Source: Gekko japonicus
Taxonomy: Eukaryota
Direction of reading: 5' to 3'
Assembly: GCF_001447785.1 (NCBI RefSeq)
Contig: NW_015172562.1
Location: 740,861-804,860, forward strand
Length of the DNA: 64,000 nt
Shown here one piece after another: positions 3,644 through 48,567 of the stretch. Within the stretch, counting starts at the first letter, position 1; each line of letters starts with the position of its first letter. Under the pieces are notes generated by a model. That model searched no databases. It worked only from the letters and a program-made list of their open reading frames with translations, and was not told the DNA's origin. The position numbers and the translations under genes are program-made.

Positions 3644-3722
3644 TGCTGAGTTTAGCATGTGGAGGGATTTGAGGGGCTTAATCTCAATGCTTTAAACTGC
3701 TGAGCAAGGCAGGTCAGATTAA
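3644..3722 (+). promoter_or_regulatory. Rod-type proximal promoter module of GNAT1 (NRL/Maf-like and CRX/OTX sites)
   Basis: TGCTGAGTTTAGCA (3644-3657, MARE-like), TTAATCTC (3678-3685), AT-rich flank plus TGCTGA (3698-3703), AGGTCA (3711-3716), GATTAA (3717-3722). The cluster is about 280-350 bp upstream of the ATG. Confidence 0.6.
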
Positions 3723-3997: not shown

Positions 3998-4100
3998 ATG
4001 GGGACAGGAGCTAGTGCTGAGGCAAAACACTCCCGTGAACTGGAGAAGCAGCTGAAGGAAGATGCAGAAGATGCCAGGACAGTCAAGCTACTGCTTCTTG
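3998..4100 (+). CDS. GNAT1: GNAT1 exon 1 coding part ([35 protein letters not shown])
   Basis: ACAATGG Kozak context; donor TTG|GTAAGC at 4101; 3 nt shorter than the canonical 106-nt exon. Confidence 0.95.
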
Positions 4101-7100
4101 GTAAGCCCACCAATCCCACCCCCCCCGCCAGCATCATACCCAAGTTGTCACTGTACTGCTATTACTTCTCTGTTCCCCATACCCCCAACAGCACATACGT
4201 CTTAGCTCTCTGTTGTAAATGGGGAACACTTGGCTGAGGGTGAGGATATACATTAAATCATGGTTGAAACAGAGCAAGTCCTTAGTGTAATGGTGGCCCA
4301 GAAGGACCAAGTGGAACCTGGAGATACCATTGTCCAGTTTTATATCTGGTTTGGCTTCTTGGAAAGCAGCTTCCACTTTAGTCCTCTGAGACTGATAGAG
4401 GGACAGGGAAGAAATATCCACACATATCAAAGGCCACAGAAAGANNNNNNNNNNNNNNNNNNNNNNNNNNNNNNNNNNNNNNNNNNNCTCAAGTTCAAGG
4501 CACCTCCTGTCAGGTATAGCTGTCTGGGTTCTTACATTGGTTTTCTTAAACAGAGGGTCTATGCATTTTAGATCTGCTGCTTGGGTCATTCTCCCTTTAC
4601 TGGTTTAAGTCGATATTTTTGCTGGAAACTGTGACTCATATTTCCAGCAGTTCTAACAGTAGATTACTTACTCTGCTACCTCTTCTAATTAGATTTACAG
4701 AGCTGGGAGGGGGAGCATGAGGTACCTGATGTGAATTCTATATTAGTTGCATAACCACTGAGCATTAAGCCTGCCTCCTCTCTTTAGTGTTTATCTAGGT
4801 TTTGAACTGAAGGTCTCTCACATCCCTGGCCCAGTTCATCCAGAAATACTATGTCGGCTAAGAAGCTGCCTGCTTAAGAGTTGCAATTATATCACTCTGC
4901 TGAATCCTGTTTTTGAAAGATCCTTATAACACCTACTATGTGTGAGAGAGATGTAAAAAGAGGGGAGTGGCAAATCTGTTGAAGTCAATAGGCTTAGAGA
5001 AGGGTGTAACTCTGGCCAGGAGGATACCATTAATCTTGCAAGTGTATAACCATTAGCTAAGGGCCTCAGGAACACCGGCGTCGTGAGCGTGAAATGTCAG
5101 TGTGAGAATGCGATGTTACTTGTTCATTCATCCATACCTTTCTATAGCCCCAAGTACTGTCACCCCACCTCTGTGTTCCGGCAGACTAAACGTGGTGTCG
5201 TGGTTACAGTATCACTCTATGTCCTGGGAGACCCAGGTTCAAACTCTGCCACGGAAGCTTGCTAGGTGACTTTCAGCCTAAGCCACCACATAGGGTTGTT
5301 GTGAACTGTACACTGGAGAAGATGAGAACAGTGTGAGCTGATCTGGGTCCCCACTGGGGGGAAAGGTGGGGTATAAGCAATAAAATCAGCAAGGGCTTTC
5401 TCCCCAGCAGCACTGGGAGACCCACAGGGGCATTACTGCAGTAGCTCTTGCCCCCTTCTTCTATATCACTGTGGATGGTTGGTTGGCATGACTGGCCAAA
5501 ATTCTGTGCACCTTCTGCACAGTAGTCTTCAGTCTGTCATCCTCGCCTGTGATGTCTTCATATCTAAGTATGTCCACATTGTCACTTCTCTGTGAAGTAT
5601 ATGTCTCTAGACTATTTAGGGCCCAGATCTCACCCACAAAAGTGAGCAGTCTTATTCCATTTTAAACCTAAGCTTTGGGGTCTGAGTAATACTCCAAAGC
5701 TCACTTGCTGCAAAACCAGACACACAACCAGGTCTACAACTGAAATGAGTGTCTGGACCGTGACTGAGGAAAATGGGGACTGAAAACAACCCATTCTTTA
5801 ATATATAGCTCTTATAACTGATCTGAAATGGGGAATTATTATTACCAAAGAGAGTTACAAATATAGCTTGTCACTAAAGAGGAAGAGACTGGTACGTCTG
5901 TCATTCCAAAGCACTGTTTATTCCAGTTGGATTTGATTTGATGCTATATGAGGTATCTTGTGTTTGCTTGCTGACCAGGCTTGAAGGCTACATATATGTA
6001 AGGCTATACTCTCCCCCTTGTGAGAGGCAGCAACACTACTGAGGCATACATAAAGTTATGCATGGGATGGAGAGAGTCGACAAAGAGAAATTTTTCTCCC
6101 TCTCCCAAAATACTCGACCTCGAGGGCATCCAATGAAGCTGATGAGCAGTAGGTTCAGGACAGACAAAAAGAAATAACAGAGAGTGATCAAAATGTGGAC
6201 TCATCTGCCAGAGGATGTAGTGGTGGCCACAGGAATAAACAAGCTTTCAAAGGGGATTAGACAGATTTGTGAAGGATAGGTCTATCAGTGGCTACTTGGC
6301 AAAGTGACTGAGAGGAACCTCCACATTCAGAGGCACTAAACCTCTGAATCCCAGAATCAGGCAGCAACATCAGGGAAGGTCTTGGCTTTTATGCCCTCTT
6401 GTTGGCCCTCCAGAGGAACTGGTTGGCCACTGTGTGAGATAGGATGCAGCACTAGATGGACCACTGGTCTCATCCAGCAGGGCTCTTAAGTTCATCAGGG
6501 CCGACTTATCCATTAGGCACAGTAGATACAGTGCCTCGGGCCCACGAAAATGTTTTAATTTCTTTTAAAATCAGAAGAAAAAATGAACTTTTAGGGTTGG
6601 AGAAAATGGTGGTTTTTTCATATCAGAAAAGAATGACATTTTAGGGCCCACAACAATCTATTAAATAATGCCTAAAACAGTAAAAAAGTTGAAGTATTTA
6701 AAGTTATATCAAAAATAATTTTAATATTGATATTATCATTGTGGGAGGGGTCCACAAAGGCAAACATCCCTAAGGCCCACAAAAGTCATAATGCAGTAGG
6801 GCTGCCAAGTGGGGGCGGGTGGCGCAATGTTCCCTCTAAGCTGTGGCATCTTGTGAGCAGAGGTTCTGCTTTGTGAGCGACTGGCATTAAAGTTGTGAGC
6901 AAGTGATTTGGCTACTGCATAAATTAGTTTGCTTTGGAGCCCTCCTTCCTGAGCTAAGAAAAAAATGTGTGAGCTGGAGGCTAAAAAACTGTGAGCTAGC
7001 TCACACTAACTCAGCTTAGAGGGAACACTGGTGGCGGGTAAACCCCCGCTTTGGAGGCCGTTTCCGCCGCCGCAGAATCGGACCCCGGGGGGGCTCTGCC

Positions 7101-8309
7101 CCCCCCCGAAGCACAGTGTGGCTGCGTCACCAAAGGTGACGCAACCACGCCGATCACGTTGGGGGCGTGGCCGCGATCATCGGAGGGAAAACTCTATGGT
7201 TTCCCCTCCGACGATCGGGGCCATGCCCCCAATGTGACTGACGTCGCGCGTCACTTCTGGGATGTGCTGGCAGCGCACACACACATCAGAGGAGAGCTCC
7301 CGGAGCCCGGCGACGCTCCCCCGCTGGTAAGGAGATTCGACTTGGCAACCCTATAATGCAGCCCTGAGTTTCATATGTTTCTTTGAGCATAAAAGTAGGC
7401 AGTGCTGCAGACATTGGTGGGAGGGGGGAGGGTAAAAGCTAAAATCTTCCTCCACATACCATCCAGTATCTGCCATAATGTATGTGCACTGCCATCAGAG
7501 ATAATAAACGATACAAAAATCACTGTGTGAAGACAAGTTATAACAATTTTACTGTTCTTGTAATTAAAAATAGAAACTTTTCCAAATCCTCATACACCCA
7601 AAGTTGCTCAGCAAAACAGTAAATATTGGCAGCCTGCAGAAACTGCGCTTCTGTTCCTTAAAGGAAAACTAGCAACAAGATGACCTGAGACTTCTGTACT
7701 CCAGCAAATAGTTATACAATCCTTATTTTGGTGGCAATTGCATGGTGTATCTTTCAACAGACTAATGTGTCTCCCAGGTAAGGTCATGTTTCTGGTCTTC
7801 ATCAGAGTCAGAAATATACAATTTCCAATCTGGATTTAAAGTATTTATAACAAAGTCTCACCACTTCCTATACTTGAGGAGCAAAACACTTCGAACTCAG
7901 AAGGGTTGGTAGAAGCTTTTCAACATCTGTAATTTCCTTCCATAGCAGCTGGTAGGAGGCAAGCTTAACCCTTTCCTTTCCATGGTATTTCCTTGATTTA
8001 AAAATGCTCCTTCTAGTTTCTCAGTAGAGTGAATACACACAGGCAACCTTTTTAGTTAGTCCAAATAAGGATCAAACTAACTGTGATGGGGGGGGGATCC
8101 TCATGTGTTAATATGAGACACCTGTTCATATGTTAAGAAAGTGGCACATCTGTGAGGGGAGCTAACCCTGCTCCTTCATGTGCCTTACACACACCGTGGT
8201 CTGTTATTATCAACAGTTTCTGTCCCGGGCAGACTCACTTCTAGTACTGGAGAAAGGCTGGGAGAAAATTAAGACTTGAAATGCTATCAGTAATCAATGA
8301 ATGGCAGAG

Positions 8310-8345
<36 letters not shown>

Positions 8346-11300
8346 TCTGATTTATACTGTGTGGCTTTGGTATGGTTTAAATGTTTTCTCATTGATTTTG
8401 AAGTCTGATTAGCAGAAAAGGGAATACAAATACTATAAATAATGGCTTCAAACACTGGAGCAAAGTGGCTTAAGGTGCTGGGCAAGAGGATTTAGCTCTT
8501 CAATTAAAAATAAGCCTTGCCTTCTTTCTTTACTCATAATCAGGAAGCTTTGTGTAAATAATGAGGGGGGGGGGCTTTTTATTATTATATATGTAAGCAT
8601 TTAAGAAGTGCCAGGTTTAGGAATACTGCCATCTAGGGTGGAGGATAAAAACAGATTTCTGGAGAGCTTCACTGAAGTGTTGCCAGGCAACAGTGGAATA
8701 AGCATCTTGACTGGTTCTGTCTGGGGACAAGATGGAGGAGGAGGGCAGGAAGGGAGACTGCAAGGAGCATCTTTTGAGGAGACAGCTGAGGGGACATCTA
8801 AGGAGATACTGCCTTTCAACTGAAGCAAAAGCTTAATCATCCTGAGGGCAATAAAACCTGTGTCAGTGTATCTGACATTCTGATGTTGGGCTCTCCCTGA
8901 CCCAGCCCATACTATTGCCGTCTGGATCCCAGAACCCCTAAAGAAGAGAGAGGTATACATATGTGCATCCCACATTAACAATGACTCTGCTGGGACATCT
9001 TCCTATAAGGAGGAAGCATCTGGGCTCTGAAGACTAAAGAGAAGTATTTTTTTATTCACAACTATACTTCAGGAGTCTATTGGGTTGATCTTTGGCTCTG
9101 TGTATCACAGTCTCATTTTTAGCAGCACAGTTCACTTAAAGCTCCCAATTATCATTTCCTTTTCCCATCTTTAAATAAATAACTAAATAAGAGCTGTTTT
9201 TAACATTTCATTTCAGGTTTGAATGAGATGCAACTGCTTTGCAAGTACAAGTATGTCCCTTGCTGCTGATAGGAGGTTAAGCAGGGCTCATTTAATGGCC
9301 ACAGCACCTGCTTTCTTGGGTTGCTAAAGGCCTCCCTGTGTCCACTATGCAAGCAAAAAAATTAACAGCATACACAACAGAGGTGCTGTCTTCTCTTCTT
9401 TGCGGCTGAGTCTGAGAGGATACTTTCAGTGAGCAGTACAGTTTATCCCAATTGAACGGAGAGAAAAAAATTACAGGCTTCCAAGGGAAACAAAACTGAA
9501 CTAAGTAACTTTTAACAAGTAGTTGTAAGACCATTACAGCAGCTGTGCTGGTTTGGACCAATGGTCCTTCTCGTCTAGCATCCTGTTTCCCACAGTGGCT
9601 TACCAAATGTCCCACGAAAACCAACAAGCAGGGCTCAGAGGCTGAAGCCTTCCTCTGTTGCTTTCCCCTGAAACTGGTATACAGAAATGCACTGCCTCAA
9701 ATTTGGAAGTTGCAATAAAGAATTCAGTGCAACTGATTTGAGATTTTAAATCGACAATGAGCTAAAAATAAAAAAGAAAGCATGGACATCCCTAGTCTAG
9801 AGGGAAGTTTGCTGTTATCTGCCATAAACCATGGGGAAAAGCCAGGAAAAAAGGTATTTTGTGAGTTTTAAGCAAGAATAGTCAAAGGAAGAACATGAAG
9901 GGATTCAAGGCATGTTTTTAATGTGTAAATTATAATAAGTTTGAAAAGTTTATTTTCTTTATGTTACTTATCTCCAGTCATGTAACCTGAAAAGGAAAAA
10001 CTGAATAGAGCTTTGAGCTCTAAGAACATTTTCCCCAAACATATCTTCCTTCTCCAGACAATTCTCAAAATCTGAGCAAAGCAATGAACGTTTCAGAACA
10101 ATTCATTTCAAGATCTATAGCTTTGGACCAAACTGATCAATGTAGAAAAGCTACAATGTCATGCATAAAATCTAAATGTTACAATGAAGTAGATTTAAGA
10201 TAGTGATTGTCCCTAAAATGCAATACTAATGGTATGGATCATATGAAGAATGGAAGTAGCATTACACCATTAGCTCATAAAGTAGCCATGTGACACTATA
10301 AAGAATAACAAAAAAAAATATTCCAGTAGATGTTTTGCAGATTAGAACCGAGTTCTTCAGAAACGTTGGACAATACTAGCGTGAATCCTCACTAGCAGGA
10401 TGTAAGAGGATGAGCGAAAAACAGTAGAGTCAAGGAGCCATAAAATACAAGTGGTATGAGATGAAATATAATTAGTGGACGGTCTATAATTCAGATCTAA
10501 TCAAGTGAAAACATTAGATAATTCACTAATTATAGTCTTAGCAAGGCATTGGATCACATAAGCTACTGTTGGGTCTCAGGCATTCTCCAAGTCAATCTCT
10601 TTTGCCAGGAGATTACTCTGACTGAAGCGGGAACCTTCAACATGCAACACACGTACCCTCCCATCAGTGCTATAAAACTATTGGAGGCAAAGGGAAGGAT
10701 ATCAGAGGATTCAGGCATTATTAGCACCTCACATACTTATAAGTTTTAATGTAGATTTGGTAAATTACTGAATGGTTGATTTCCCAATGTGTGGATATTG
10801 TGCCATTGATGGAGTTAGCTTTCTAGGACTGATACAGAGTGATCTTTTTTGTTCTAACAGGGGCTGGAGAATCTGGCAAAAGCACCATTGTCAAGCAAAT
10901 GAAGTAAGTTTTTGCACAGGCAACAATTCTTAGCCATTCCCTGAAGCAGCATTCAAAGAGTGAGGATGGCAGTAGGATTTTTTCCCCAATCAAGTGCTTT
11001 GCTCTATGGCACTCCTGTCTGGGAGACTGGTAATGTAGAAGTTGGGTACTTCCTGAACAGTCATGGCTGTTCCTCCAGTTGTTGTAGTGCTCTCATGGAA
11101 TGCCTCACACATTATGTCTTAAGAGTATACCTAAGACATTTTAAGCATGCACAAAATTCCAAACAAAACTGGAAAACAAATCATATGACATTCCTGATTC
11201 CATGGCCCTCCAAATTATATTTCCCCTTGTAATCCCCTTTTGGTTGCCCTGTGTCCTGACAGTATCATGTTCTGGATTCATTTCCTCCTCTTAACTTCCA

Positions 11301-14300
11301 CAGAATAATCCATCAGGATGGTTACTCCTTAGAGGAGTGCTTGGAGTTTATCTCTGTAATCTACAGCAATACTTTGCAGTCCATACTGACCATTGTGAGG
11401 GCCATGGACACACTCCATATCCAGTATGGAGACCCAGCTAGAAAGGTAGGTAAAAAAAGAAATGGATATTGTTATTACTTTTGCACTTTAAAAAGGTGCT
11501 GTGTAATATAAAAACACATAATTTTAAAAGTAGACTAAAAACAACACAACCCTACCTTAGGGTTATAGTCTAAACAAACAGAAACATGAACACATGAAGT
11601 TGCTGTAGTCTGAGTCAAACCACTGATCTATCAAGGTCAGTATTGTCTACTTTGACTGGAAGCTCTCCAGTTAGGAGTCTTTCACGTTACCTACTACCTG
11701 GCCCTTTTTGGTAGAGATGCTGGGTATTATTAAACCTAGGACCTTCTGCATGTAAAGCAGTTCCTCAACCACAGGGCCATGGCGTCATCTCAAATTATGA
11801 GGGGAAGGAATGAGGAAGTGGTAAGCAATTTATATAATTTCTAGGAATAAGGTCCATTGTGGAAATAAATACGAGCTCTAGAAAGAGGCTCTGGGTGGAT
11901 GCCCCGGCCTTGGGCACTCAGCATCAATTTTCCATGGCGACCTCAGCAGAGTCCACTGTTTTCTCCAAGGGAACTGCCATCCGGAGAGCAGTTGTAATTC
12001 TGAGTGATCTCCAGCCTTCACCTGGAGATTGGCAAAAACAGTTCCCCAGGAGGAAATTACTTGTTTGGAGGGTGGAGTCTATGGCATGGTACCTTTCTGA
12101 GGTCCCACCCCTCCTCAAACCCCACCATCTCCAGGCTCCCCCCTCAAATCTCCAGAAATTTCCCAACCTGGAGTTGGCAACCCTATCTCCTTCCCAGCCA
12201 ACTATCAACCTACCTTTATCTGCCCCTCTGACTTCAGCTTTCCATCTCCTCCCCCCTCCCTGCAGCCTCTATCTAGGAAAAGAACAGTCTTTCTCCACAG
12301 TGGGGACCAAAGCAGCTAACATCATTCTCATCTCCCCCTTTCAATCTGCACAACAACCCTGTGAGGTAGGTTAGGCTGAAAGTCTGTGAGTGGTCTGAAA
12401 TCACCCACTCAGCTTCCACAGCAAGAACCTGGGTCTGGCACACCCTGCCCTGAAGCACTAACTGCTGCGTCACACTAGCTGTCATGGGGGGGGGCCACCT
12501 CAGCAGGATATAATGAGACAGAGTACATCATTTTCTCCAGGGGGACTGATCTCTGCCATCTGGAGAGCAGTTGTAATTCTGAGTGATCTCCAGCCCTCAC
12601 CTGGAGATTGGCAACAATGGTTTCCCAGGAGGAACAGTACAGTCTTTCTCCACAGTGGGTACTAAAGCAGCTTACATCATTCTCCCCTCCCCCTTTTGAT
12701 CTGCACAACAACCCTGTGAGGTAGGTTAGGCTGAAAGTCTGTGAGTGGTCTGAAATCACCCACTCAGCTTCCACAGCAAGAATCTGGGTCTGGCAGACTC
12801 TGCTCTTAAGTGCTAGCTGCTATGCCACACTGGCTGTCTTAGTTGAGAGCCAGTTTGGAATAGTGGTTAAGAGCATGGACTCTAATCTGAGAGAACCAGG
12901 TTTGATTCCCCACTCCTCCACAGGCAGCTGCTGGTGTGACCTTGGGTCAGTTATAAGTTCTCTCAAGGGCAATTCTCAAGAGAGCTCTCTCAGCCCCACC
13001 TACTTCACAGGGTGTCTGTTGTGGGGAGGGGAAGGGATTGTAAGCCGCTCTGAGACGCCTTCAGGTAGTGAAGGGCTGGGTATAAATCCAATCTCCTCCT
13101 CCTCTTCTTCATATTTAATTTAAATATTAAAAAAATAGAGCGGCTGCTGGAGGTGTCATCAAGACACCCAGAGGGCGCTGCCAGGCTTTGGGTAGCCAAC
13201 CTCCAAGTGGAGCCTGAAGATTGTCTGGTATCACAACTGAACTCCAGACAACAGATCTCTCTCCCCCTGGAGAAAATAACTGCTTTGGAGGGCGGAAGCA
13301 GAATACACAGAAGGAATATGAAGTGCAGTATGATGAGGAATCTTTCCGTGGTCAGCCTCAGATGGTGAAGTGAAACCCAACTCCTGTTTCAATTGTAGGA
13401 TGATTCCTGCAAACTGCTGCACTTAGCTGACACCAGTGAAGAGGGCACCATGCCTCCGGAGATGTCTGACATCATCTGCCGCCTCTGGAAGGACACGGGC
13501 ATCCAGGCCTGTTTTGTGAGGGCCTCGGAATACCAGCTGAATGACTCAGCTAGCTAGTAGGAACCTTCTGCTTGTACCCCTTGAGAGACAGAGAGAGAGG
13601 GTCTCCAAAATAATTTAAGGGTGCGCAAGATGATCCCTAGTACTGTGTACTATTTGGAGAAATACATCTGTCCCCACTTTCCGCAGCTTTTGATGCACCT
13701 TTAGGAAATGTTTTAGAATCTGTATGCCTCTACCTGCAATTTTGGTAGACAGGGAACACCTCTGTCCCCATGAGCTGATGCAGCAGTGTATTAGGCCAAA
13801 AGAGAATGACCTTGTAATTGGATACTGTTTTGAAGTTTGCACCCAGGGTGGCTGTAAGGTGAAGGTGAGTCCAGGAAGGAACAGGCCAAAATCAGGTACT
13901 CTGCTGACCTGGATCTATGAGCAGAGTGACAGAGGAGGGCTCACGTTGCTCCTCTGCCTTCCTTTCTGAGGGTGGTGTTGGCTGGACACATGTAGCATTT
14001 CTCTCCCCTTACCCTTGAAGTGCATTGTAGAAGCACTCTTCTAGAACACACAGTCTGCCACTTACTTTATCAAACAGACTAGGGGACAGGACATTTGACT
14101 AGCCTCTCCGAAGGCTTGAGGTAACTCACATTGTAGGTTCTACATCTTCCTATCTTCAGTTACCTGAGTGACCTGCCACGGCTGGTGACACTTGGATACA
14201 TCCCTACAGAGCAGGATATTCTACGCTCCAGGGTCAAGACTATGGGCATCATTGAAACTCAGTTTTCCTTCAAGGATCTCAATTTCAGGTATCACAGAGT

Positions 14301-17300
14301 TGCAATAGCTGGGCAATCTGCCACACATTTGTAAAGAGGGAAGATCATACACGGCATGCCGGGAAGCAAAAAGATGGGGGGATACATACACTATAACATT
14401 CTAGGTAAAAATGATAGTGACTAGATCACAAAATGCTTCCTGGCTATTTTCTTTTTAAAATATATTAATTTAGCTCTATTAGTAAGCCATTGGACATCTT
14501 AAACTGGCAAAGAATTATTCACTTGTCTACTATATACTTTTTGTGTGGAAAGATGTCACCATGGAGGAAGGTGAGGCACAGGAAGTTGGTAGAGGCCTGG
14601 TGAGGGAACGGAGGCAGTGTGGAAGATGCTGGAGCTGGTTGCACTCTACAGGGAAAACAACGGAATGAAAAGGATTGGTAATGTTTGCATGCTGGTGAAT
14701 TGGAAGGAGAGCATGGTGGCCCAGATACAAAGAGGAGGACAATAAGCTTGATAGCTCCCGATTTGAAATTTGGGACAGGCATTGTTGTCATAGTTCTGTT
14801 GCTTTGTGATATGAGAAACCACCCTTCTGAAACTTTGACCTGTTCTGCTGCTGTTACTAGGAACTGGCAAACCCAGTTCCGCTTAGGAAAGTTTTCATAG
14901 ATCAGACGCCACTTTATAAGATGCAATGGACAGCAACTGAGGAACAAACAAAAATCATATGTAACACTAAATATACAGCTAATGCTCAGATGACAACTGC
15001 ATGTCTAGTTTTCCTCTCCGGTACATCCAGAAGGCCTTCCCTTGTGTTGGGATGTCATGACATTCCTGACTCACCCATTGCTGCTTGCCAGTGATGTACA
15101 GCAGGGACAGAGTAATGTGGTACGTTATGCCGTCACAAACCAGGTATGTTGTAGTTGACATTACATAAGGGAACACATGAAGTAGATGTAAGTTGCCCAG
15201 GGAACCACTGTGAGACTCCCCACTGTGTCTCATGTACTGCTGATTTAAATCCCACTTTTCTCCTGATTTGTATTCCAGACAACTGTTTCCTGCCTCTTCC
15301 ATGTTCATATTTATGGCTCAGTCCTCAGTACACCATTTGAAATGAGAAACCAGGCAGAGCCCCAGAGGAAGCATGACTAATGGACAGAGTTTGACATAGA
15401 ATTATTGGGCTGGTATAGGATAAAAGGCAAGGGAAGGTGGAGAAAGTCAATGTTGGCCTTCCCTGACATTTCATAGATGCATCTATCAAGTGGCTCATTT
15501 AGTTGCTGCTGAATTAGCAGTTTGATAACTTCTACTTGTGAGGATTTAGCACCCTCTAAGGATACAAAGTGGAAGTGCAAGAACTCCAATCTGTGAAGGA
15601 GGCTTTGGTCTGCTCTTATTTAAAAACTAATTTCAATAGTCCCTCACCCCCAAGATAGTGAACTCCTCATCAAGCACTTGCTTCTTGCTGGTACATCTTT
15701 CTTCTTCCTCCTGTGACTTTTAGTCTAGGGACAAGAGTCATACAAACGTCTCTTATACAATACAGCTAGCCCGGGCCTTACTTTTTCCCATCTCAGATCA
15801 GGGGATGGATTATAGAACTCCAGTTAGAGGGGTTTTTGGAAAAAAATACCTTCCATTAATTCCTCACAGGCTGCATGTTGCAAAGGAACAGCCAGAGCAA
15901 CAATTCAGTACAACTAGAAGCCTGCAGAAAAAAGAAATGCCTGGCTAGCTCAAACATTCCAGTAATGCACTCTTCCCTTCTGTCTTACTGAATCTTTGCC
16001 CCGTCATCCTTTGTTCACCTCCATGTTACCGCCACTTGTAATTTTGTAACTTGGCCACACAACCTAGAGCTCCAGTCATCCTTGAATCTCTGCAGTGTGC
16101 AGCCTTGAGTGCTAAAAGCTCCCCCCCCCGAGACCCCCTTCCTCATTAGCCCATATTGCCTCAGTTCTTTTTCTTCTGCTTTCCCCCTCATACTTCCTTT
16201 AGCTACCCTTCCGCCAAGATCCTCTCAATTCACTGCCTACTTTGTACCCTCCCACAATGCTTCTGGTTTCCCCATTCCTTATCTCCCTTAGCTCCTCAGG
16301 ACCTAATAGCGGTCACTGGCTTGCTCCTATAAAGCTACTCCTGCACTCTAGAAGGTTCTACTCCTTGCCAAACTTCCCTTCTCTATCTGAAGGCAGACTG
16401 CAAGTACGCTTGAAATATTTTGCTTTGAGCAATTGGAACAGTTATGAACCAAATTGGTCAATTATCATTGAAAAGCTGCATCGTCACAAGTGCGATACAC
16501 TACTGCTCTAACAGTGAAAATAGCTTGGATTCTATGCCTTTTCTCCCTGCATGCTTCTCTCTTGATGTTGCAGATGCTGTCCTCTACCAAGCCCATTTCC
16601 TCTAGCCCTAGGCAGAACTTCTGTATTCCTTAGACCACTGTCTGATCTGCAAACTGTCTTTCCAGCACCTGGGAGAAATGCATGTGGAGGATCCAGGGAT
16701 CCAAGCCATAGGAGTGGTTGTGAGTTCAGCAGAGCTGCAATGTGAGGTTCTAATCCGTAAGAACCACAACTCTAGAATCAAGAGTTAGAACTCCACTGCT
16801 TTGCCTCCATTTGAGTGGAATGCACCTTATTCATAACTACCAGCCTCTGTTACAGTATAACCAATGTTTGTCCTTAGATTTATGGACCTCCAAAGGAAAA
16901 TCACTGTTCATGAGTTGGGTCTGCTCACAACATTATCTTGGTAAGGTTCCAGCCTGCATCTGCACTGAAAGATCAGTCTCTAGGTTATGTGGCATTTGCC
17001 AAGGTGAGACTTCTTGGCACAGAATAGGCAAACATGAAGTCATAAGCAAATCTCCTGAACCTCTGGCCAATAGCCTCTTCGTGCTTGGTTTAACTGGCTC
17101 TTCAAATCTGCACTATCTGCCAGATATCTGGTAGACATATCCAAAGCTTTAAGTTTTTCATTTTTTATGTTTGCAAAAATCTCACTGTTACTTAGTGGTT
17201 TTAACAGAACTTGTTTCATGTTGGTTTAATTTCTATTGGTTTTAATAGGAAGCATATTTCTAATTATAATGTTTTTGTTTCCCATCCAACTTGGCTGAAG

Positions 17301-20300
17301 TTTTAAGGGATTGTACCTCTCTGCCATATTTCAAGCAGATGGGAGACAGGCCCCCATTTTAATAGGCAATTTAAAAGAGACAAAGACCTGTTTTGACAAT
17401 TGAATGAATGTTTCCTATATGCCAGTTTCATATCTTCTGTTCCCACTTGACTCTCCCCCTCTGAGCACATATACAAGAAACAAAGAATCTGTTTTAAGTT
17501 GACAACAAATTACTTCCTATTTACTTCAGTGACTGATTGTTTCCTGTTTACTGCTTCTCAATCTTTTGCCTAAGATCATCATGTGTGTAGTGTATGTTGA
17601 TGACTGCTTGATCAAATCCTGTCTCCCCACATTCCATCTTAATTAAATACTTCGCTTTCTTGATGCTACAGCATCCTTTGTTTTACACAAACCTTTTAAA
17701 ATCTGCCTATAAAAGAAGAACTGTTTCTCCCATCTTTTTGAAATTTGGCATGGAAAATCTTTTGTGTGACAGGTAAACACCCACAGAACTTAATCCTAAT
17801 TGGATGGAACACAAGTGGACTAGTTCATTTGTTTTGATTAGCATTTGTTTCCCAAAACAATGCATAGCTTTGCTTTGAAACAAATGCATAGTTCTGATGG
17901 ATTTGCTTTGAAGCAAATGCGTATCCATGAATACATGAAGGTGCCTTGTGAAGTCATTCTCCCTTTACTTACTGTTTACAGAAAAATTTAAATGCATGAA
18001 ATTACTGTAGCAGTAGATGCCATGGATAATCCAGCACAACTCTATAGACATGATAAATGAGACAAAGACTTATGGAATCAAATAAATGATCTTCAGTCCA
18101 GTATGATAATATTGATGGGAAGGAACGATGCCCAAGGTACTGAGCCACTAGGGACCTTAGCAGGCATCACTAAGCAAGGCTGTTCAGTGTGGCCCCTCTT
18201 TAACTTACTGGCAGGATGTTTGATGTGGGGGGCCAGCGCTCAGAACGTAAGAAGTGGATTCACTGTTTCGAGGGAGTCACCTGCATCATCTTCATCGCTG
18301 CCCTCAGCACTTACGACATGGTCCTAGTGGAGGACGATAAAGTGGTAAGCAGTACCCCAAGAAATCTGACCCTTTAGAAATGGCTGGCAGAATTTAGTAA
18401 ATAGCCCAAATCAGCTTATACTGTAAGCTGGTCAGTCTCCTGTTTCAGGAGACCAAATGTAATGTTGCAGGGGCGTGATTCAGGCAATGGGTGAGAAGAG
18501 GTATTTTTTTACAAGATCTGTACAGGTTTAGCCACCAAGTCAATAATCACAGATTGTTCCCTGATAAGAGTTGAAAAGAAGGATCCTGTTTCTATCAGCT
18601 CTCACAGTAGGAGCTCTGAGCTCTGAGCAAGCACAGGCCAGCTACAACAGCAGCAAACTTAACTAGGAATCAAAGCAACTTTGGCTGCGGTCACACGGAA
18701 CATTAGCCACACTACAGAGACGGAAAATAGGCGGATTTTCCGGGCGCGATCACAGCGCCACATCTGGGAAGCGTAGAGCTTCCATGCCGAACCTGAGGTT
18801 TCCTGCCGAAGATGCGGGGTAAAAAACTAGTACCTTCGAGGTACTAGTTTCTGGAAACCGCGGGGCAAGGGCGGGCGCCTGATCACATTTCCGGTGGAAT
18901 CCTGTGGCATCCGGCGCCCGCCCATATCCCGTCGTGAACAGGTTCCCCCCCCCAAGTCTCCACAGGATGCGCACAAGCGCCCAACGGCGCATGCGGACAA
19001 AGAGGCCCCCTCCCACTGCAGCCAGGCTTGCCGCCTCTGAAGGGTCGCTATGGCCACTGTCGCACAGGCGGTTAGAGTGGCTGTGATGAGGGGGTCCACC
19101 TCCCCCTCCATTTGCTATGCCTCAGAGTTCTGTTGGGGTACGGAAGCGTCTGTCGGCCTCTCTGGTAAGCCTTCAGATGTGCAGATACGATTGCTCAGTC
19201 ATGCGTATACACAAACTTCAGTTTTTTAAAAAAATCCAACCCGTTTGCCACAGAAGCGGCGCCTAGCGATTGCTGGTGTGATTGCGCCGCACCACTTCTT
19301 TGCCTCGCTGCAGGATCATCGTGTGATCGGCACCTGCCCCCTAACCACGGGACCTCCACGGGACGTCTGATCGCGCAGCCGCGCATTATTTTCCTCCGGG
19401 GCAAACAGCCACGCTTCCCCCCCGCCCGCATTTTCCGGCCCGTATGACCGGGGCCATTATTAGATAGAAAGCAAAACTCAATGCCTGTGACTTTTAAGAG
19501 TTGTATACAGAAGGGGACATCTATCTGTTGGAAGATACAGGAATTTTATTTCTTATTAAGTTTGGCCATGCTGGATTAGGGTACTGGGTCAAACTGAAAA
19601 GGGCCCCTTTTGGTCCCATTTCTCTTCTCAGAATCGCATGCATGAGAGTCTGCACCTGTTCAACAGCATCTGTAACCACCGATACTTTGCTACCACTTCC
19701 ATTGTTCTTTTCCTCAATAAGAAAGATGTATTTCAGGAAAAGATCAAGAAGGCTCATCTCAGCATCTGCTTTCCTGATTATGACGGTGAGTTCCCCGCAT
19801 TCCATATTTATATGTAGGAATAGAATTTAAGACATTTCCTATGGTCAGTTGTGCAGCGAACAAAAAATATGGGAACGCTGGCAGAGAGAGAGGCAGTGGT
19901 GTTTATTTGTCAGCCTGAACAAATGTTGCTGATACTTGAACACCAGATGGCATCACACCAGATGGCATCACAATAAGAGATCTATAACACCATCATTAAG
20001 GATCTCCCTTTTTATCTGTGCAAGATTTCCCCCACTACTGTCTCTCTATGGGACAAGATCAATACCTATGCTGCTAATAAAAGGGGAGATTGTCCAAAGA
20101 AAACCTTGGAATATATAATCATTTGTATAATCTACCTCTGTCACTGGGAATGCAGAACAGCGATTTGAATACTTTCATTACTAACTCACCCCTTCATTGT
20201 CTTGTTGAGACACTGCTGAACTGTTCAACACAACCTGTATTTGCTTGAAGGGATGAGGGTGATGCTGCAATAATCAGGTGATTAGCAGAAAGATCAGTTG

Positions 20301-21171
20301 ACAGGAACAGGAAGAGCTGGGCCTGTTGTACTACAGGAAGAAGTATGTTTTGCCCTGTCCAGTTAAGTGTATGGAGAAGACATGTTTATTATTTATTCCC
20401 TTGGTGGGTGAACAACTTGTCTTCTGTACCTTCCCATCCTATCGCACCAATCGATGAAAGCTTTTGCAGTGAGAAGGCTGCATTCACTTCCTTTGTGAAA
20501 ACACCCATGTGTATCTGAAGAAGTGTTCATGGACACAAAGACTCATACCTTGAATAAAACTTTGGTCTTAAAGGTGCCACTGGACTCAAACTTGAGTCTA
20601 CCCAAGTATAACAATCAGAGTTTGGAAAACCAGCCACCAGGGGTCCTCAGTGCTCTATGGGAAAATGCTAGCTTTCTGCCACGTAAACCAGAATTTAGCA
20701 TCTCCAGCTCGCTTTGCATTTTTAGGCTTCAAAATGGTTTTCCTCCTCTTGTCAAACACACGCAGTTCAAATGGAGTAAAATTTGGGATGGTCACGGCAT
20801 AAACTAGGCATTAAATGGCAGACAGGGGCAAGGCTCCTGACTTTTTAAACCTAATATGAAAAACTGCTGAGAGTGAATGAGCCCTGAAGCAGGAGGGGCT
20901 TTGTGTGGGGAAAGGGGTGGTGTCACAGCTTGGCCACTCAGAGAAGCCACTCCTTGATGCCAGCATCCACATCTATGCAGGGCCAAATACGTATGAGGAT
21001 GCAGGTGCCTACATCAAGGCCCAGTTCCTGGAGCTGAACGTGAGGCGGGATGTCAAGGAAATCTACTCACACATGACCTGTGCAACCGACACACAGAATG
21101 TCAAGTTTGTCTTTGATGCAGTCACTGACATAATCATCAAAGAGAACCTCAAGGATTGCGGCCTCTTCTGA
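3998..21171 (+). CDS. GNAT1: Rod transducin alpha subunit, complete spliced CDS join(3998..4100,10861..10903,11304..11445,13399..13556,14160..14288,18215..18344,19632..19785,20981..21171), 349 aa
   Basis: Eight GT-AG exons of 103/43/142/158/129/130/154/191 nt sum to 1050 nt with no internal stop. GNAT1-diagnostic peptides: [78 protein letters not shown]. Confidence 0.96.
4445..4487. other. Assembly gap (others at about 50106-50119, 55557-55585 and 60167-60178)
   Basis: Runs of N; all are intronic. Confidence 0.98.
5183..5385 (+). mobile_element. tRNA-derived SINE, degraded, with L2-like tail
   Basis: A box TGGTGTCGTGG and B box GGTTCAAACTC; similar to 12843-13112. Confidence 0.6.
6045..6495 (+). 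mobile_element. CR1 LINE 3' fragment
   Basis: End of ORF2 ([18 protein letters not shown]-like region) and CR1 3'UTR GGACCACTGGTCTCATCCAGCAGGGCTCTT; homologous to 39700-40110. Confidence 0.8.
6797..7353. mobile_element. CpG-rich palindromic hAT MITE B nested in A
   Basis: TIRs TAGGGCTGCCAAGT...ACTTGGCAACCCTA; perfect 8-bp TSD TAATGCAG (6789-6796 and 7354-7361). Confidence 0.85.
6825..7030 (-). mobile_element. 206-bp hAT MITE C nested in B
   Basis: TIRs CAATGTTCCCTCTAAGCTG/CAGCTTAGAGGGAACACTG; flanking GTGGCG duplication; opposite orientation to the copies at 39333, 42567 and 47560. Confidence 0.88.
8312..8343. repeat. (GT)n microsatellite
   Basis: Seen directly. Confidence 0.95.
10861..10903 (+). 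CDS. GNAT1: GNAT1 exon 2 (P-loop [15 protein letters not shown])
   Basis: Acceptor ttttttgttctaacag; 43 nt; donor GTAAGT. Confidence 0.96.
11304..11445 (+). CDS. GNAT1: GNAT1 exon 3 ([47 protein letters not shown])
   Basis: Acceptor ttaacttccacag; 142 nt; donor AAG|GTAGGT. Confidence 0.96.
11580..11780 (-). mobile_element. Squam3-like tRNA-derived SINE with CR1-type tail
   Basis: Reverse complement matches the copy at 61610-61824. Confidence 0.65.
12843..13112 (+). mobile_element. tRNA-derived SINE with L2-like 3' end and (CCT/CTT)n tail
   Basis: A/B boxes (TGGAATAGTGG; GGTTTGATTCC), GTGACCTTGGG core, tail GTATAAATCCAATCTCCTCC. Reverse 3' fragments at 31960-32092 and 63838-63915. Confidence 0.75.
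13399..13556 (+). CDS. GNAT1: GNAT1 exon 4 ([53 protein letters not shown])
   Basis: Acceptor tttcaattgtag; 158 nt; donor CTA|GTAGGA. Confidence 0.94.
14160..14288 (+). CDS. GNAT1: GNAT1 exon 5 ([43 protein letters not shown])
   Basis: Acceptor cttcctatcttcag; 129 nt; donor CAG|GTATCA; contains Switch I. Confidence 0.95.
18215..18344 (+). CDS. GNAT1: GNAT1 exon 6 ([43 protein letters not shown])
   Basis: Acceptor taacttactggcag; 130 nt; donor GTAAGC; G3 motif DVGGQ. Confidence 0.96.
18683..19455. mobile_element. CpG-rich non-autonomous DNA transposon (PIF/Harbinger-like) in GNAT1 intron 6
   Basis: Imperfect TIRs GGCTGCGGTCACACGG/CCGTATGACCGGGGCC; abrupt CpG-rich composition; TSD not clean. 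Confidence 0.6.
19632..19785 (+). CDS. GNAT1: GNAT1 exon 7 ([52 protein letters not shown])
   Basis: Acceptor ttttctcttctcag; 154 nt; donor GTGAGT; G4 motif NKKD. Confidence 0.96.
20511..20590 (+). mobile_element. Penelope-like terminal repeat remnant (degenerate hammerhead)
   Basis: GTATCTGAAGAAGTG...CACAAAGACTCATACCTTGAATAAAAC...GGTCTTAAAGGTGCCACTGGACTC. Confidence 0.6.
20981..21171 (+). CDS. GNAT1: GNAT1 exon 8 coding part (PNTYEDAG...[31 protein letters not shown])
   Basis: Acceptor atctatgcag; 191 nt to TGA; matches ORF 20905..21171. Probable donor CAG|GTGAGA at 21213, 41 nt after the stop. Confidence 0.96.
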
Positions 21172-21432
21172 CGGCAGTCACTCTGGTTCCTAGGCTGGCT
21201 GCCTAAGTCCAGGTGAGATGGGGAACACTGGGAAACAAAAATGACAAATCAGTCCATCCTGCTTTATTACACTTGCTCAAAGGTTGCTCAAAGGTAGCCT
21301 ATTTTATTGTTAGTTTGTATAGAAACACATATGGCATCGCTAGGGGACCACTTTTTGGGGTTGGGGTTGAGGTTGAAGTACTGGCCCACTACCAAAATGG
21401 CTGTCCTAAAAAAATTAGCTGCTGATCAAGAC

Positions 21433-23156
21433 TAGGGGTGTGCATTTGGCAGAAGCCGAGCCAAATATATACCCAAATAAGGCCTTATTGGCATTATTCA
21501 GGCATATATTCCGCTGAATGTGATTCTCCAATATGCATTTGGCAGCTGAATAAAGAATCCCAAATATATTCAGGATCCCCAAATATATGCAGCTCCATTA
21601 TACCCTATGGGACCATTATAGGTAAAGGTAAAGGTTCCCTTCCTCGAAAGCCAGTCGAATCCGACTCTAGGGTTGCGGTGCTCATCTCCGTTTCAAAGCC
21701 GAAGAGCCAGCGCTGTCCGAAGACGTTTCCGTCGTCATGTGGCCGGCATGACTAAACCCCAAGGCGCACGGAACGCTGTTACCTCCCCACCGAAGTGGTA
21801 CTTTTTTATCTACTTGCAATTTCTTGCTTTCGAACTGCTAGGTTGGCAGGAGCTGGAACTAGAGACAGGAGCTCACCCTGTCTTGCGGCACCCGGGTCTT
21901 GAACCGCTGAACTACTGACCTTCCACAGCCTGCAGTTCAGCGTCTTAACCACTTGAGCCACCACAGACCATTATAGTCAATGGCAAATCTCTCCTAGGGT
22001 ATATTCAGTGCCCCCAGGGGCGGGGTTTGAGGTAGTGGCACCAAATTTGCAGGGGGTCCAATTCTACAGGCACCCAAAGACAGGGCCCCCATCCCACCAT
22101 TGTTTCCAATGGAGGGGAAAATAGCACAAGAAGCCCAGCAGATTCTGCCAGAGAATCTCTGCAGTAGATAGTGTGTGTGTGTGTGTGGGGGGGGGGGTTT
22201 AAAAGAGATAGACTTACCTTCTCGTCCTTGCTGTTTCCCACTATTTCTGCCTCTTTCCCGTTGTTTGCCCTGATTTCCATGGCAACAGGGGAAGGGGGAT
22301 CTCTGCAGCCAATCACTACAATGCATTTGCAAATGGCACTGCATTGCAGGCTTGTGACTTAGCAAGGTTGTTGCTGAAGTCCAGCAACTACTTTGCTTTC
22401 TCCTCCCCTCCCCCTCGCTCAGATTGTGATTCTATGGCTGTGCTTGACATCAGAGCAGACCTGTTGGGATGGCCTTTGCCACAATGGCACAGGGTGCTAC
22501 TGCTGGCCACTAGTAGGATGGGTTCTGCTGCTCGGCACTAGTAAGTTGGTTCTGGTTGAGTTGTTCTGTTGGCCACTCGTTACGAGTGCACTGTTTCTGC
22601 TGTCCTTGCATAAAAGCCACCCCACAGTTTGTACTTCAGAGATTCTTACATTTGACCTTAGTCCTGTTGGCTTCTTGGCAGTGGCACTGGTTCTTCTGGG
22701 TACACTTCGCTGGTTCTACTGCTGGCCTTGCAAACAATAGTCCCCCCCCCACACACACACACACTTCACTTTCTACTGCAGAGATTCTCTGAGACAATCT
22801 GCTGGGCTTGTGCTATTTTCCCCATCATTGGAAACCCTGGAATTGGATCCCCTGCTCCAATCTTTTTCAGACTTCGGGATCCTTTTGGGGAAAGGCTCCA
22901 GTAGCTACACTGCAAATGTGGTGCCTTACCTCAACCCCGCAGCCACTAAATATACCCTAGGAGGGATTTGGCATTGACTATAATGGCTCCATGGGGTATA
23001 ATGGAGCCGAATATATTTGGGAATCCTGAATATTTCCTGAATAGGATATCAGTACCGATTTTGATATTCAGAAATATTCAGGTATACTGAATATATTTGG
23101 CTCAAAAAATGCTGAATCTGAATTATACTGAATGTTTTTTTCTTTGCACATCCCTA
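21433..23156. mobile_element. 1.7-kb non-autonomous hAT element with long imperfect inverted arms
   Basis: TIRs TAGGGGTGTGCA/TGCACATCCCTA; 8-bp TSD ATCAAGAC/ATCTAGAC. Confidence 0.8.
21622..21965 (-). mobile_element. Sauria SINE nested in the hAT element
   Basis: (ACCTTT)n tail, seen as GGTAAAGGTAAAGG on +; tRNA-like head; 11-bp TSD GACCATTATAG (21611-21621 and 21966-21976). Confidence 0.85.
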
Positions 23157-23208
23157 ATCTAGACCTTAGTCCTGACCACTTCCTGAGATGTTCTCTCTCT
23201 CTCTCCAG

Positions 23209-23880
23209 GTACTCCTGATCCTTCACATGAAAAGTGGCACTGCCAGTTCAGTAGTGTGTGAAGGGAAGCAATCACTTTTTCTCAAGCTGGTGTATTTATA
23301 CACAGGTACTGCTTGGAGCAATGAACCACACATGGGGAACTGAGTTTCTGCCTCATATGAACTGGGTCAGGCCTGAAATTCTTGTCTGAAATTCACATAA
23401 GCAAAGTGGTCACAGATTCAAGAAGCAACAACCATCTTTTCCTATAAATCTTTACCTGAAACTTGAAGTAAGGCATTGCAGGTTCGTCCTGCTTTGGGTA
23501 TTATCAGAAAACATGGCAACTGAACTATGAAGAACTAAAACCCAACATAAGGAGTTGCTTACACAGTGACCCTTTCAGATATCTAAAAGCCCCACTTCAG
23601 AAATACCACTGAGAGTCTACCCTCTACCACAAGCAGTCAAATTCTTAATTGGCTACTGTGGGATGGAATGCTGTGATAGACAGCCCAAGGTCCCTCCCAT
23701 GCAGACGACAACAGATCCGTGGTATAGGCTTTGGGGTCATCTGTAATGGTGAAGCCAGCTTTTCTCCTGTGCTGCTGCTCTTTGTTCTAGTAGCCTTGGT
23801 TCAGAGCTAAACAGGCAAGGGAATCGGTTTCGTGTGCAAGGCCTGGTGGGACAGTGCAAGAGAAGCAAGGCAGTGCAAAC
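23209..23880 (+). other. GNAT1: Probable non-coding terminal exon (3'UTR) of GNAT1; 3' end uncertain
   Basis: Strong acceptor ttctctctctctctccag|G at 23208, paired with the donor at 21213. Gi/Gt genes commonly have a 3'UTR intron just after the stop. Confidence 0.55.
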
Positions 23881-25091: not shown

Positions 25092-25168
25092 CTGTAACAG
25101 AGGAAGAGCAAGGGAAAGGGAATAGATCAGCCACCATTGGGATACATGGCCAATGAAAACTTGCACAG

Positions 25169-25607
25169 CAGGGGTCCCCAACCTGTTTGAGCCTACGGGC
25201 ACCTGCAAGCCAATATTTATTAAAATGGTCATAGACCAGCACAAGTCACAGTTTGCGCAGACCGCAATAAAATCTAGGTATAATCCAGTGGGTAAACCTA
25301 CAGGCACATCTGGAATTCTGACCCAGCATGGTGGGCGGAGCAACAAAATGGCTGCCACAGGAGGTGGAGCCAGCCACAAAATGATTTGTCAATAGCACCG
25401 TGCAGGTCCCTTGCTGCGCTGGCAGCTGCTGCCAAAGCAACATTCAAAAAAATCTGCACAGCCAGTCAAATCTCCAATAGCCAGTCAGAAGCCCTGCTGG
25501 GCAAAAGTCCTATCTGGCCCCTCCCACTTTCTAAAAACACTTAGTGGATGCCAAAAAAGGTGTTGGCGGGCACCATGGTGCTCACAGGCGCCATGTTGGG
25601 GACCCCA
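25169..25607. mobile_element. hAT/Charlie-like MITE
   Basis: TIRs CAGGGGTCCCCAAC/GTTGGGGACCCC; flanks TTGCACAG/TTCTACAG; related copy at about 42915-43268. Confidence 0.7.

Positions 25608-27056: not shown

Positions 27057-48567
<21,511 letters not shown>

What the first reader, a model, noticed from the sequence alone, without database searches (positions are those of the whole stretch)
3998..21171. Full-length but fast-diverging rod transducin gene (GNAT1) in an apparent gecko genome
Seen: all 8 exons splice in frame to 349 aa. G1-G5 motifs, R174, T177, Q200, the myristoylation G2/S6 and the receptor-coupling tail [11 protein letters not shown] are intact. There are about 30 differences plus one codon deletion against recalled human GNAT1, a normally very conserved protein. 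Established: geckos have transmuted, cone-derived photoreceptors and lost rod opsin. Inference: this is either a gene in early decay with no stop codon yet, or a rod G-protein retained or repurposed for another opsin or tissue (for example pineal or deep brain). The gecko assignment rests on repeat content only.
Basis: partly seen in the sequence, partly recalled or inferred. Interest (0 to 1): 0.8.

Follow-up and report, generated by a model that had tools for sequence, protein, structure and literature searches.

The report
Gecko keeps intact rod transducin gene
A complete, apparently working copy of GNAT1, the light-signalling gene of rod cells, sits in a lizard genome that other notes call a gecko's (geckos have no rods); it has changed unusually fast, but its survival in geckos was already reported in 2019.

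Summary
Eight coding exons (3998-21171, + strand) with canonical AG/GT borders join to 1050 nt, giving 349 aa with no internal stop. The N gap (4445-4487) lies inside intron 1 and touches no codon.

Every exon matches bovine transducin-alpha best, and the convergent neighbour is GNAI2, so this is the GNAT1 orthologue. It differs from bovine GNAT1 at 33 residues plus one lost codon (K25). With a medaka GNAT1 as outgroup, 22 changes fall on this lineage and 3 on the bovine one (Tajima chi2 14.4, p about 1e-4). They cluster in the helical-domain exons 3-4, and include T178M at the RGS contact and E235K. Exons 5, 7 and 8 are about as conserved as in neighbouring GNAI2.

An ORF this intact is unlikely after long neutral drift: 3.6% at 0.05 substitutions per site, 0.15% at 0.10. 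A unique CRX/MAF-type site cluster sits 280-355 nt upstream of the ATG. One public contig shows a spliced 3'UTR intron. Three RNA-seq runs of unknown tissue show almost no signal beside strong GNAI2.

Best reading: a maintained gene under relaxed or shifted constraint, used outside rod vision.

Pinto et al. 2019 already reported intact, eye-silent GNAT1 in Gekko and Eublepharis. I could not verify the species or whether the speed-up is gecko-specific.

The parts
3641..3722 (+). Candidate proximal promoter module: two AAACTGCTGAG (MAF/NRL half-site type) and two CRX/OTX-like TAATC/GATTA sites, 280-355 nt upstream of the ATG
   Evidence: This is the only 100-nt stretch in the 64 kb with at least 2 of each motif, and 0 of 200 shuffles gave such a cluster. 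The motifs were chosen from knowledge of rod and pineal promoters, so the test is post hoc.
3998..4100 (+). GNAT1 exon 1 (ATG, residues 1-34 plus 1 nt). Carries A3T, E9A, K18Q and the loss of the K25 codon
4445..4487 (.). Assembly gap (N), inside intron 1; not filled in
10861..10903 (+). Exon 2 (43 nt), P-loop [15 protein letters not shown]
11304..11445 (+). Exon 3 (142 nt), start of the helical domain; 8 differences from bovine, 4 residues seen in no other row
13399..13556 (+). Exon 4 (158 nt), helical domain and the most diverged exon: 10 differences from bovine, 8 of them unique to this lineage by the medaka outgroup
14160..14288 (+). Exon 5 (129 nt), switch I. R174 and T177 are kept; T178M is the ATG codon at 14242-14244
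18215..18344 (+). Exon 6 (130 nt), DVGGQ and switch II. Carries A225T, and E235K (codon 18339-18341)
19632..19785 (+). Exon 7 (154 nt), NKKD; differs from the consensus of the other GNAT1-type rows only at a variable site (S271Q); N287D, counted against bovine, is a bovine-lineage change
20981..21212 (+). Exon 8: coding to the TGA at 21169-21171, then 41 nt of 3'UTR up to the donor CAG|GTGAGA
21213..23208 (+). 3'UTR intron (1996 nt), GT..AG with a long polypyrimidine tract before the acceptor. Contains a high-copy expressed SINE-like repeat at about 21620-21966
   Evidence: Contig joint in run X1; sequence
23209..24470 (+). Exon 9, non-coding. The end is inferred from the AATAAA at 24448. It would overlap the 3' end of GNAI2 on the other strand
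   Evidence: The start is supported by the X1 joint and by a contig starting at 23204; the end is not shown.
23950..27248 (-). GNAI2 3' end: exon 9 (about 23950-25091, non-coding), 3'UTR intron 25092-27021, exon 8 27022-27248 (stop at 27057-27059)
   Evidence: Spliced reads in three RNA runs
31478..48567 (-). GNAI2 exons 7 (about 31478-31633), 6 (32417-32546) and 5 (48439-48567). Exons 1-4 were not found in the window

Best explanation
This is the single-copy orthologue of GNAT1 (rod transducin alpha). It is still a working gene kept by purifying selection, but it has been released from the very tight constraint of rod phototransduction. Its core GTPase machinery, lipid-anchor signal, receptor-binding tail and splice signals are intact. 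Its helical domain and a few regulatory contacts (T178M at the RGS-contact threonine, E235K in or beside switch III) have drifted or adapted. It is probably transcribed at a low level, or in a small CRX/OTX-positive cell population outside the main retina. The pineal or deep-brain photoreceptors are the leading guess, with pinopsin as a possible partner. There a slow G-protein that does not depend on RGS9 would be tolerable.

Shown: structure, orthology, intactness, asymmetric rate, and a spliced 3' end in one run. Inferred: selection, site of expression, partner opsin, and the effect of T178M.
For: Intact 8-exon ORF with canonical splice sites.

G-alpha domain in every exon of 40 aa or more. 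Bovine Gt-alpha is the best solved relative of every exon. The exon-7 signature is shared with the named GNAT1 of Fulmarus and medaka. GNAI2 is the convergent neighbour.

Rate: 22 changes are unique to this lineage and 3 to the bovine one, with medaka GNAT1 P0134 as outgroup. In exon 4 the window has 6-8 unique changes against 1-3 (1 in most) for every other row.

Constraint: exons 5, 7 and 8 differ from bovine at 10 of 155 residues, against 7-8 of 158 for GNAI2 versus human. In simulation, P(ORF and splice dinucleotides intact) is 3.6% at 0.05 neutral substitutions per site and 0.15% at 0.10, with 37 and 70 expected residue changes.

A unique CRX/MAF-type cluster lies upstream of the ATG.

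A run X1 contig joins 21212 to 23209 across a consensus GT-AG intron.

Literature: GNAT1 is intact in the Gekko japonicus and Eublepharis genomes yet absent from five gecko eye transcriptomes. G. japonicus has a pinopsin gene.
Against: No labelled squamate, bird or turtle GNAT1 was reachable, so the speed-up may be squamate-wide or reflect a generally faster lineage.

T178M alters a residue that is Thr in bovine and medaka GNAT1 and in the window's GNAI2 (and, from knowledge, in all Gi/Gt proteins), and several changes are radical (R101C, K117P, D137V, E156P, P161L, E235K). This also fits decay.

Three true RNA-seq runs show 0-2x depth on GNAT1-specific 3' sequence against 25-180x on GNAI2.

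Run X1 is only guessed to be RNA. If it is DNA, the joint could be a processed retrocopy.

The tissue of every run and the species are coded. The promoter motifs were picked after the fact.
Confidence: 0.6

Rival explanations
1. Early pseudogenisation. The gene lost its function with the rods, is now drifting, and has simply not yet met a stop codon or frameshift.
For: 22 lineage-specific replacements against 3 on the bovine lineage. T178M and E235K hit switch regions. Near-zero depth in three RNA-seq runs. No eye transcripts in five geckos.
Against: Intactness is improbable after more than about 0.05 neutral substitutions per site. Rod loss is placed in the common ancestor of living geckos, and by general knowledge that is over 100 My ago. 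Pinto et al. report intact copies in two deeply split geckos. The GTPase-domain exons are about as conserved as in GNAI2. All 14 splice dinucleotides, the Kozak context and a promoter cluster are kept. A spliced contig exists.
Confidence: 0.15
2. Ordinary squamate GNAT1. The extra changes reflect a squamate-wide rate or a helical domain that is free to vary. The animal may still use the gene in retinal photoreceptors, as snakes with transmuted photoreceptors do, or it may not be a gecko at all.
For: Most changes lie in the helical domain, by general knowledge the most variable part of G-alpha proteins. No squamate comparator could be obtained, and I did not verify the species. A photoreceptor-type promoter cluster is present.
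Against: The 22:3 asymmetry is large, while neighbouring GNAI2 shows only 7-8 differences in 158 residues from human. Unlabelled non-mammal-like exon-4 rows carry 1 unique change each, against 6-7 for the window in the same comparisons. T178 is Thr in bovine and medaka GNAT1 and in the window's GNAI2. Five earlier notes on this genome name Gekko japonicus (untested). Gecko eyes lack GNAT1 transcripts.
Confidence: 0.15
3. Adaptive re-tuning. The replacements, T178M and E235K above all, were fixed by positive selection to fit a new receptor, effector or shut-off regime.
For: Changes sit at the RGS contact, in or beside switch III, and in residues 293-314, which by general knowledge form the effector-activating segment (N297A, M308V). 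The gene is otherwise well kept.
Against: No test of positive selection was possible. The scatter of radical changes over the helical domain looks more like relaxation. No partner or tissue is known.
Confidence: 0.1

Closest known systems
Bovine/human GNAT1 (rod transducin alpha; PDB 1TAD, 1TAG, 1TND, 1GOT)
   Same: Same 8 coding exons and near-identical length (349 vs 350 aa). All nucleotide-binding motifs, the acylation signal and the C-terminal receptor-binding tail are shared. Identity is about 90%.
   Different: 33 replacements plus loss of K25. Of these, 22 are unique to this lineage by the fish outgroup, including T178M at the RGS-contact threonine and E235K. By the literature it is not expressed in gecko eyes.
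GNAT1 of Gekko japonicus and Eublepharis macularius, as reported by Pinto, Nielsen and Gamble 2019 (bioRxiv 10.1101/592873)
   Same: That paper reports an intact, apparently functional GNAT1 in gecko genomes, no transcripts in five gecko eye transcriptomes, and a suggested function outside the eye. This is the same observation and the same idea. If this genome is G. japonicus, it is the same gene.
   Different: The paper, as read, gives no rate analysis, does not mention T178M or E235K, and describes no 3'UTR exon or promoter. Schott et al. 2019 (Evolution 73:1958) may cover selection tests but is not held in the library.
GNAI2, the neighbouring paralogue in this window
   Same: Same exon sizes for exons 5 and 6 (129 and 130 nt). 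Both have a 3'UTR intron starting 35-41 nt after the stop, and the two genes converge.
   Different: GNAI2 is strongly expressed in all three RNA runs, keeps VKTTGI, and differs from human GNAI2 at only 7-8 of 158 compared residues.
Rod-type transducin in the chicken pineal gland (from my own knowledge, not checked here)
   Same: It is a precedent for GNAT1 working outside the retina with pinopsin. G. japonicus has a pinopsin gene.
   Different: No expression data for gecko pineal were available. This is a hypothesis only.

Membership tests
G-protein alpha subunit (Pfam PF00503), Gi/Gt class | G-alpha domain along the protein | tested here: met
   Exons 3-8 each match PF00503 at consecutive profile positions 43-333. 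Exons 6, 7 and 8 exceed the family cut-off on their own.
G-protein alpha subunit (Pfam PF00503), Gi/Gt class | G1-G5 nucleotide-binding motifs, catalytic Arg and Gln | tested here: met
   GAGESGKS, R174/T177, DVGGQ (Q200), NKKD and TCATDT are read directly from the sequence.
GNAT1 orthologue (rod transducin alpha) | Closer to Gt-alpha-1 than to other G-alpha proteins over its whole length | tested here: met
   Bovine transducin-alpha or Gt chimeras are the top hit for all 7 exons queried. Identity to the named medaka GNAT1 is 83.7%. The exon-7 signature is that of named GNAT1 rows, not of the GNAT2-like rows. Caveat: no GNAT2 hit appeared in the PDB searches, so the GNAT1 vs GNAT2 call rests on exon 7, N-terminus length and synteny.
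GNAT1 orthologue (rod transducin alpha) | Conserved linkage to GNAI2 (GNAT2 pairs with GNAI3 and GNAT3 with GNAI1, from general knowledge) | tested here: met
   The downstream convergent paralogue matches GNAI2 chains best in exons 5, 7 and 8.
GNAT1 orthologue (rod transducin alpha) | Expressed in rod photoreceptors and coupled to rhodopsin and PDE6 | not testable with these tools
   Run tissues are coded. The literature reports no GNAT1 transcripts in gecko eyes and loss of RH1.
GNAT1 orthologue (rod transducin alpha) | Switch-I Thr178, the main RGS9 contact (from general knowledge of RGS-G-alpha structures) | tested here: not met
   The sequence reads VKTMGI, with codon ATG at 14242-14244. 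Bovine and medaka GNAT1 and the window's GNAI2 have Thr. This bears on function, not on orthology.
Unitary pseudogene / gene in decay | Premature stop, frameshift, lost start codon or lost splice site | tested here: not met
   No such lesion was found.
Unitary pseudogene / gene in decay | Neutral rate of protein change (omega about 1) | tested here: inconclusive
   No orthologous DNA was available. Indirectly, 22 lineage-specific changes are fewer than the 37 or more expected after 0.05 neutral substitutions per site, and intactness would then be 3.6% or less.
Unitary pseudogene / gene in decay | Loss of transcription | tested here: inconclusive
   Depth is 0-2x in three RNA runs of unknown tissue, against 25-180x for GNAI2. 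One contig in run X1 carries the spliced exon 8-9 junction.

The most novel reading that the evidence does not exclude
Geckos keep GNAT1 as a re-tuned transducin for a photoreceptor outside the rod pathway, for example pineal or deep-brain cells using pinopsin. T178M and E235K would be adaptive changes that uncouple it from fast RGS9-driven shut-off. The gene would then be a natural example of a phototransduction G-protein re-used after its cell type disappeared.
Probability: 0.2. Interest if true: 0.55.

Novelty: already known. Interest (0 to 1): 0.3.

Why it matters
Geckos are the textbook case of photoreceptor transmutation: rods were lost and cones were rebuilt as rod-like cells. A rod-specific gene that stays intact long after the rods disappeared points to a second job for transducin. 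Candidates are pineal or deep-brain light sensing, taste, or something else.

That survival is already in the literature. This window adds four things:
- a measured rate asymmetry (22 versus 3 changes);
- the location of the changes: the helical domain, the RGS-contact threonine and the switch III area;
- a retained photoreceptor-type promoter cluster;
- a 3'UTR intron and exon that help in designing expression assays.

These make the question 'where and how is gecko GNAT1 used?' easier to test, but they do not answer it.

Tried and rejected
1. Full-length labelled orthologues. The word search only sees proteins of 0.55-1.75 times the query length, so exon queries returned unlabelled exon-sized ORFs. 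Two cluster look-ups gave one usable labelled protein, medaka GNAT1 P0134. Three other long cluster members were unrelated bacterial proteins.

No orthologous DNA was available, so there is no dN/dS or RELAX.

3. The big representative search was not used. The operators reserve it for open proteins or claims of absence. Its 50%-identity representatives carry no names and would not separate gecko from other GNAT1.

4. The joined 349-aa model was not sent to any database search or to structure prediction. Searches were exon by exon, by reference. Scripts built the joined translation from window.fa by coordinates only.

5. Species. Run and organism names are coded, and the window holds no protein that could fetch a species-labelled match.

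6. The run X1 joint as a DNA indel with a 7-nt target duplication was rejected. The 7 shared letters are TCCAG|GT, which is splice consensus, with a CAG|GTGAGA donor and a long polypyrimidine acceptor. A retrocopy remains possible if X1 is DNA.

7. A helical-domain control with GNAI2 was impossible, because its exons 1-4 were not found in the window.

8. An Rfam scan at gathering score found only a 5S-like and a tRNA-like element, and nothing in the gene.

9. Read laying was placed on non-coding sequence (21160-27056) on purpose, because reads resembling human DNA are silently dropped in conserved exons.


Full report
**Observation**

I rebuilt the gene from the sequence. Eight + strand exons carry AG before every acceptor and GT after every donor: 3998-4100, 10861-10903, 11304-11445, 13399-13556, 14160-14288, 18215-18344, 19632-19785 and 20981-21171. 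Joined, they give 1050 nt, or 349 codons plus TGA, with no internal stop.

The N run 4445-4487 lies inside intron 1, 344 nt after the exon-1 donor and 6.4 kb before exon 2. Exon 1 aligns with bovine residues 1-35 up to its last codon. The one missing codon (K25) lies in uninterrupted sequence. Exon 2 is identical to medaka GNAT1. So no coding piece is missing and the frame does not cross the gap. Whether the scaffold is correctly joined across the gap cannot be shown from the window.

**Identity**

- Exons 3-8 each match Pfam G-alpha at consecutive profile positions.
- For all seven exons long enough to query, the best solved relative is bovine transducin-alpha or a Gt chimera.
- The exon-7 sequence is the type found in the named GNAT1 of Fulmarus and medaka, not the GNAT2-like type.
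- A second G-alpha gene converges on this one from downstream on the minus strand. Its exons 5, 7 and 8 match GNAI2 chains best.
- Linkage of GNAT1 to GNAI2 is the known ancestral arrangement, from general knowledge.

This is therefore the GNAT1 orthologue.

**Divergence**

Read exon by exon against bovine GNAT1, there are 33 replacements plus the K25 deletion:

| Exon | Differences from bovine |
|---|---|
| 1 | 3 plus the K25 deletion |
| 2 | not queried (too short) |
| 3 | 8 |
| 4 | 10 |
| 5 | 5 |
| 6 | 2 |
| 7 | 2 |
| 8 | 3 |

The nucleotide-binding motifs, R174, T177, Q200, the MGxxxS acylation signal and the [11 protein letters not shown] tail are intact. T178, next to T177, is Met (ATG at 14242-14244), and E235 is Lys.

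The word search cannot reach full-length proteins from exon queries. A cluster look-up gave one labelled, nearly full-length outgroup: Oryzias melastigma GNAT1 (P0134, 333 aa). I used it to polarise the 33 differences (together):

- 22 are unique to the window's lineage;
- 3 are unique to the bovine lineage;
- 4 differ three ways;
- 4 are not covered by the medaka protein.

Tajima's test gives chi2 = 14.4, p about 1e-4.

In exon 4 the window has 6-8 unique residues, against 1-3 (1 in most) for every other row, including the non-mammal-like ones. Exon 7 is at consensus apart from one variable site.

As a control for lineage rate, the neighbouring GNAI2 differs from human GNAI2 at 7-8 of 158 residues in exons 5, 7 and 8. 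GNAT1 differs from bovine at 10 of 155 in the same exons. So the speed-up is real, but it is concentrated in the helical domain (exons 3-4). I could not obtain any labelled squamate, bird or turtle GNAT1, so I cannot say whether it is gecko-specific.

**Selection**

There is therefore no dN/dS.

As a substitute I simulated neutral substitutions on the CDS plus the 28 splice-site bases:

| Neutral substitutions per site | Chance of staying intact | Expected residue changes |
|---|---|---|
| 0.05 | 3.6% | 37 |
| 0.10 | 0.15% | 70 |

Indels are ignored, which makes this conservative. Only about 22-26 changes are seen on this lineage since the split from mammals. Pinto et al. place rod loss in the ancestor of living geckos and report intact GNAT1 in both Gekko and Eublepharis. 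Long neutral decay therefore does not fit. Relaxed but continuing constraint does.

**Regulation and transcripts**

The only place in the 64 kb with at least two MAF/NRL-type half sites and two CRX/OTX-type sites within 100 nt is 3641-3722. It lies 280-355 nt upstream of the ATG. None of 200 shuffles produced such a cluster. The motifs were chosen from knowledge of rod and pineal promoters, so this is suggestive only.

Run and organism names are coded. I laid three true RNA-seq runs (tissue unknown) and one run of unrecorded type on the non-coding stretch 21160-27056. The results were:

- **GNAI2 as positive control.** Its last, non-coding exon (about 23950-25091) has 25-180x depth. Its 3'UTR intron (25092-27021) is spanned by 61-146 spliced reads per run.
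- **GNAT1-specific 3' sequence.** Depth is 0-2x in the same three runs.
- **Run X1.** One contig joins 21212 to 23209 across a consensus intron: CAG|GTGAGA, then a long polypyrimidine tract and CAG|G. A 1464-nt contig starts at that acceptor.

So GNAT1 has a 3'UTR intron 41 nt after its stop, where GNAI2 has one 35 nt after its own stop, and a ninth non-coding exon. A spliced product exists in at least one public data set. If X1 were DNA, a processed retrocopy could give the same joint.

A high-copy, strongly expressed SINE-like repeat (about 21620-21966) explains the very high depth there.

**What is known**

Pinto, Nielsen and Gamble 2019 (10.1101/592873) state three things. GNAT1 has functional copies in the Gekko japonicus and Eublepharis genomes. 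No reads mapped to it in five gecko eye transcriptomes. This suggests a function outside the eye.

Searches for gecko GNAT1 rate or selection analyses found nothing else in the library. Schott et al. 2019 (Evolution 73:1958) is relevant but not held. Sato et al. 2018 list a G. japonicus pinopsin and note pinopsin in a day-gecko retina. Geckos lack parapinopsin.

Five earlier follow-up notes on other pieces of this genome name Gekko japonicus. I did not test this.

**Verdict**

The most likely reading (0.6) is a maintained GNAT1 orthologue under relaxed or shifted constraint, used at a low level or in a small cell population outside rod vision.

The rivals are early decay (0.15), an ordinary squamate gene (0.15) and adaptive re-tuning (0.1).

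The core finding is already published. The new details are the 22:3 rate asymmetry, the position of the changes, the promoter cluster and the 3'UTR exon. Interest is 0.3.

**Limits stated as required**

- The joined protein was not sent to any database search or fold tool.
- The big representative search was not used.
- No N was filled.

Noticed in passing
window 21213-23208 and 25092-27021: Both convergent paralogues carry an intron in the 3'UTR shortly after the stop codon: 41 nt after it in GNAT1 and 35 nt in GNAI2. Both are under the usual 50-55 nt limit for nonsense-mediated decay. The feature looks inherited from the ancestral GNAT-GNAI tandem pair.
   Followed up: partly
window 23950-24470: If GNAT1 uses the AATAAA at 24448, the last exons of GNAT1 (+) and GNAI2 (-) overlap tail to tail by about 500 nt. 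That would allow antisense interaction between a near-silent gene and a highly expressed one.
   Followed up: no
window 21620-21966: A SINE-like repeat of about 345 nt shows more than 1500x depth per orientation in the deepest RNA run. Most reads are 95-99% alike with loose ends at both borders, so many genomic copies are transcribed.
   Followed up: partly
The Rfam scan of the whole window at gathering score reported no hammerhead. I ran no lower threshold.
   Followed up: partly
window 41316-41430 (-) and 61611-61682 (+): A 5S rRNA-like element (38.2 bits, just at the cut-off) and a tRNA-like element (35.1 bits) lie inside GNAI2 introns. They are probably repeat-derived.
   Followed up: no
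window 11859-12700: Intron 3 of GNAT1 holds two copies of a repeat whose translation shares the string [16 protein letters not shown], inside a 171-codon ORF. It is probably a transposon fragment.
   Followed up: no
protein clusters of P0001, P0019, P0046, P0103: Some 90% clusters with an exon-sized vertebrate GNAT1 fragment as representative list long bacterial proteins as members (P0125, P0147, P0149, P0151). Local blastp found no match between any of the four and the GNAT1 model. This looks like a clustering artefact in the protein collection.
   Followed up: partly
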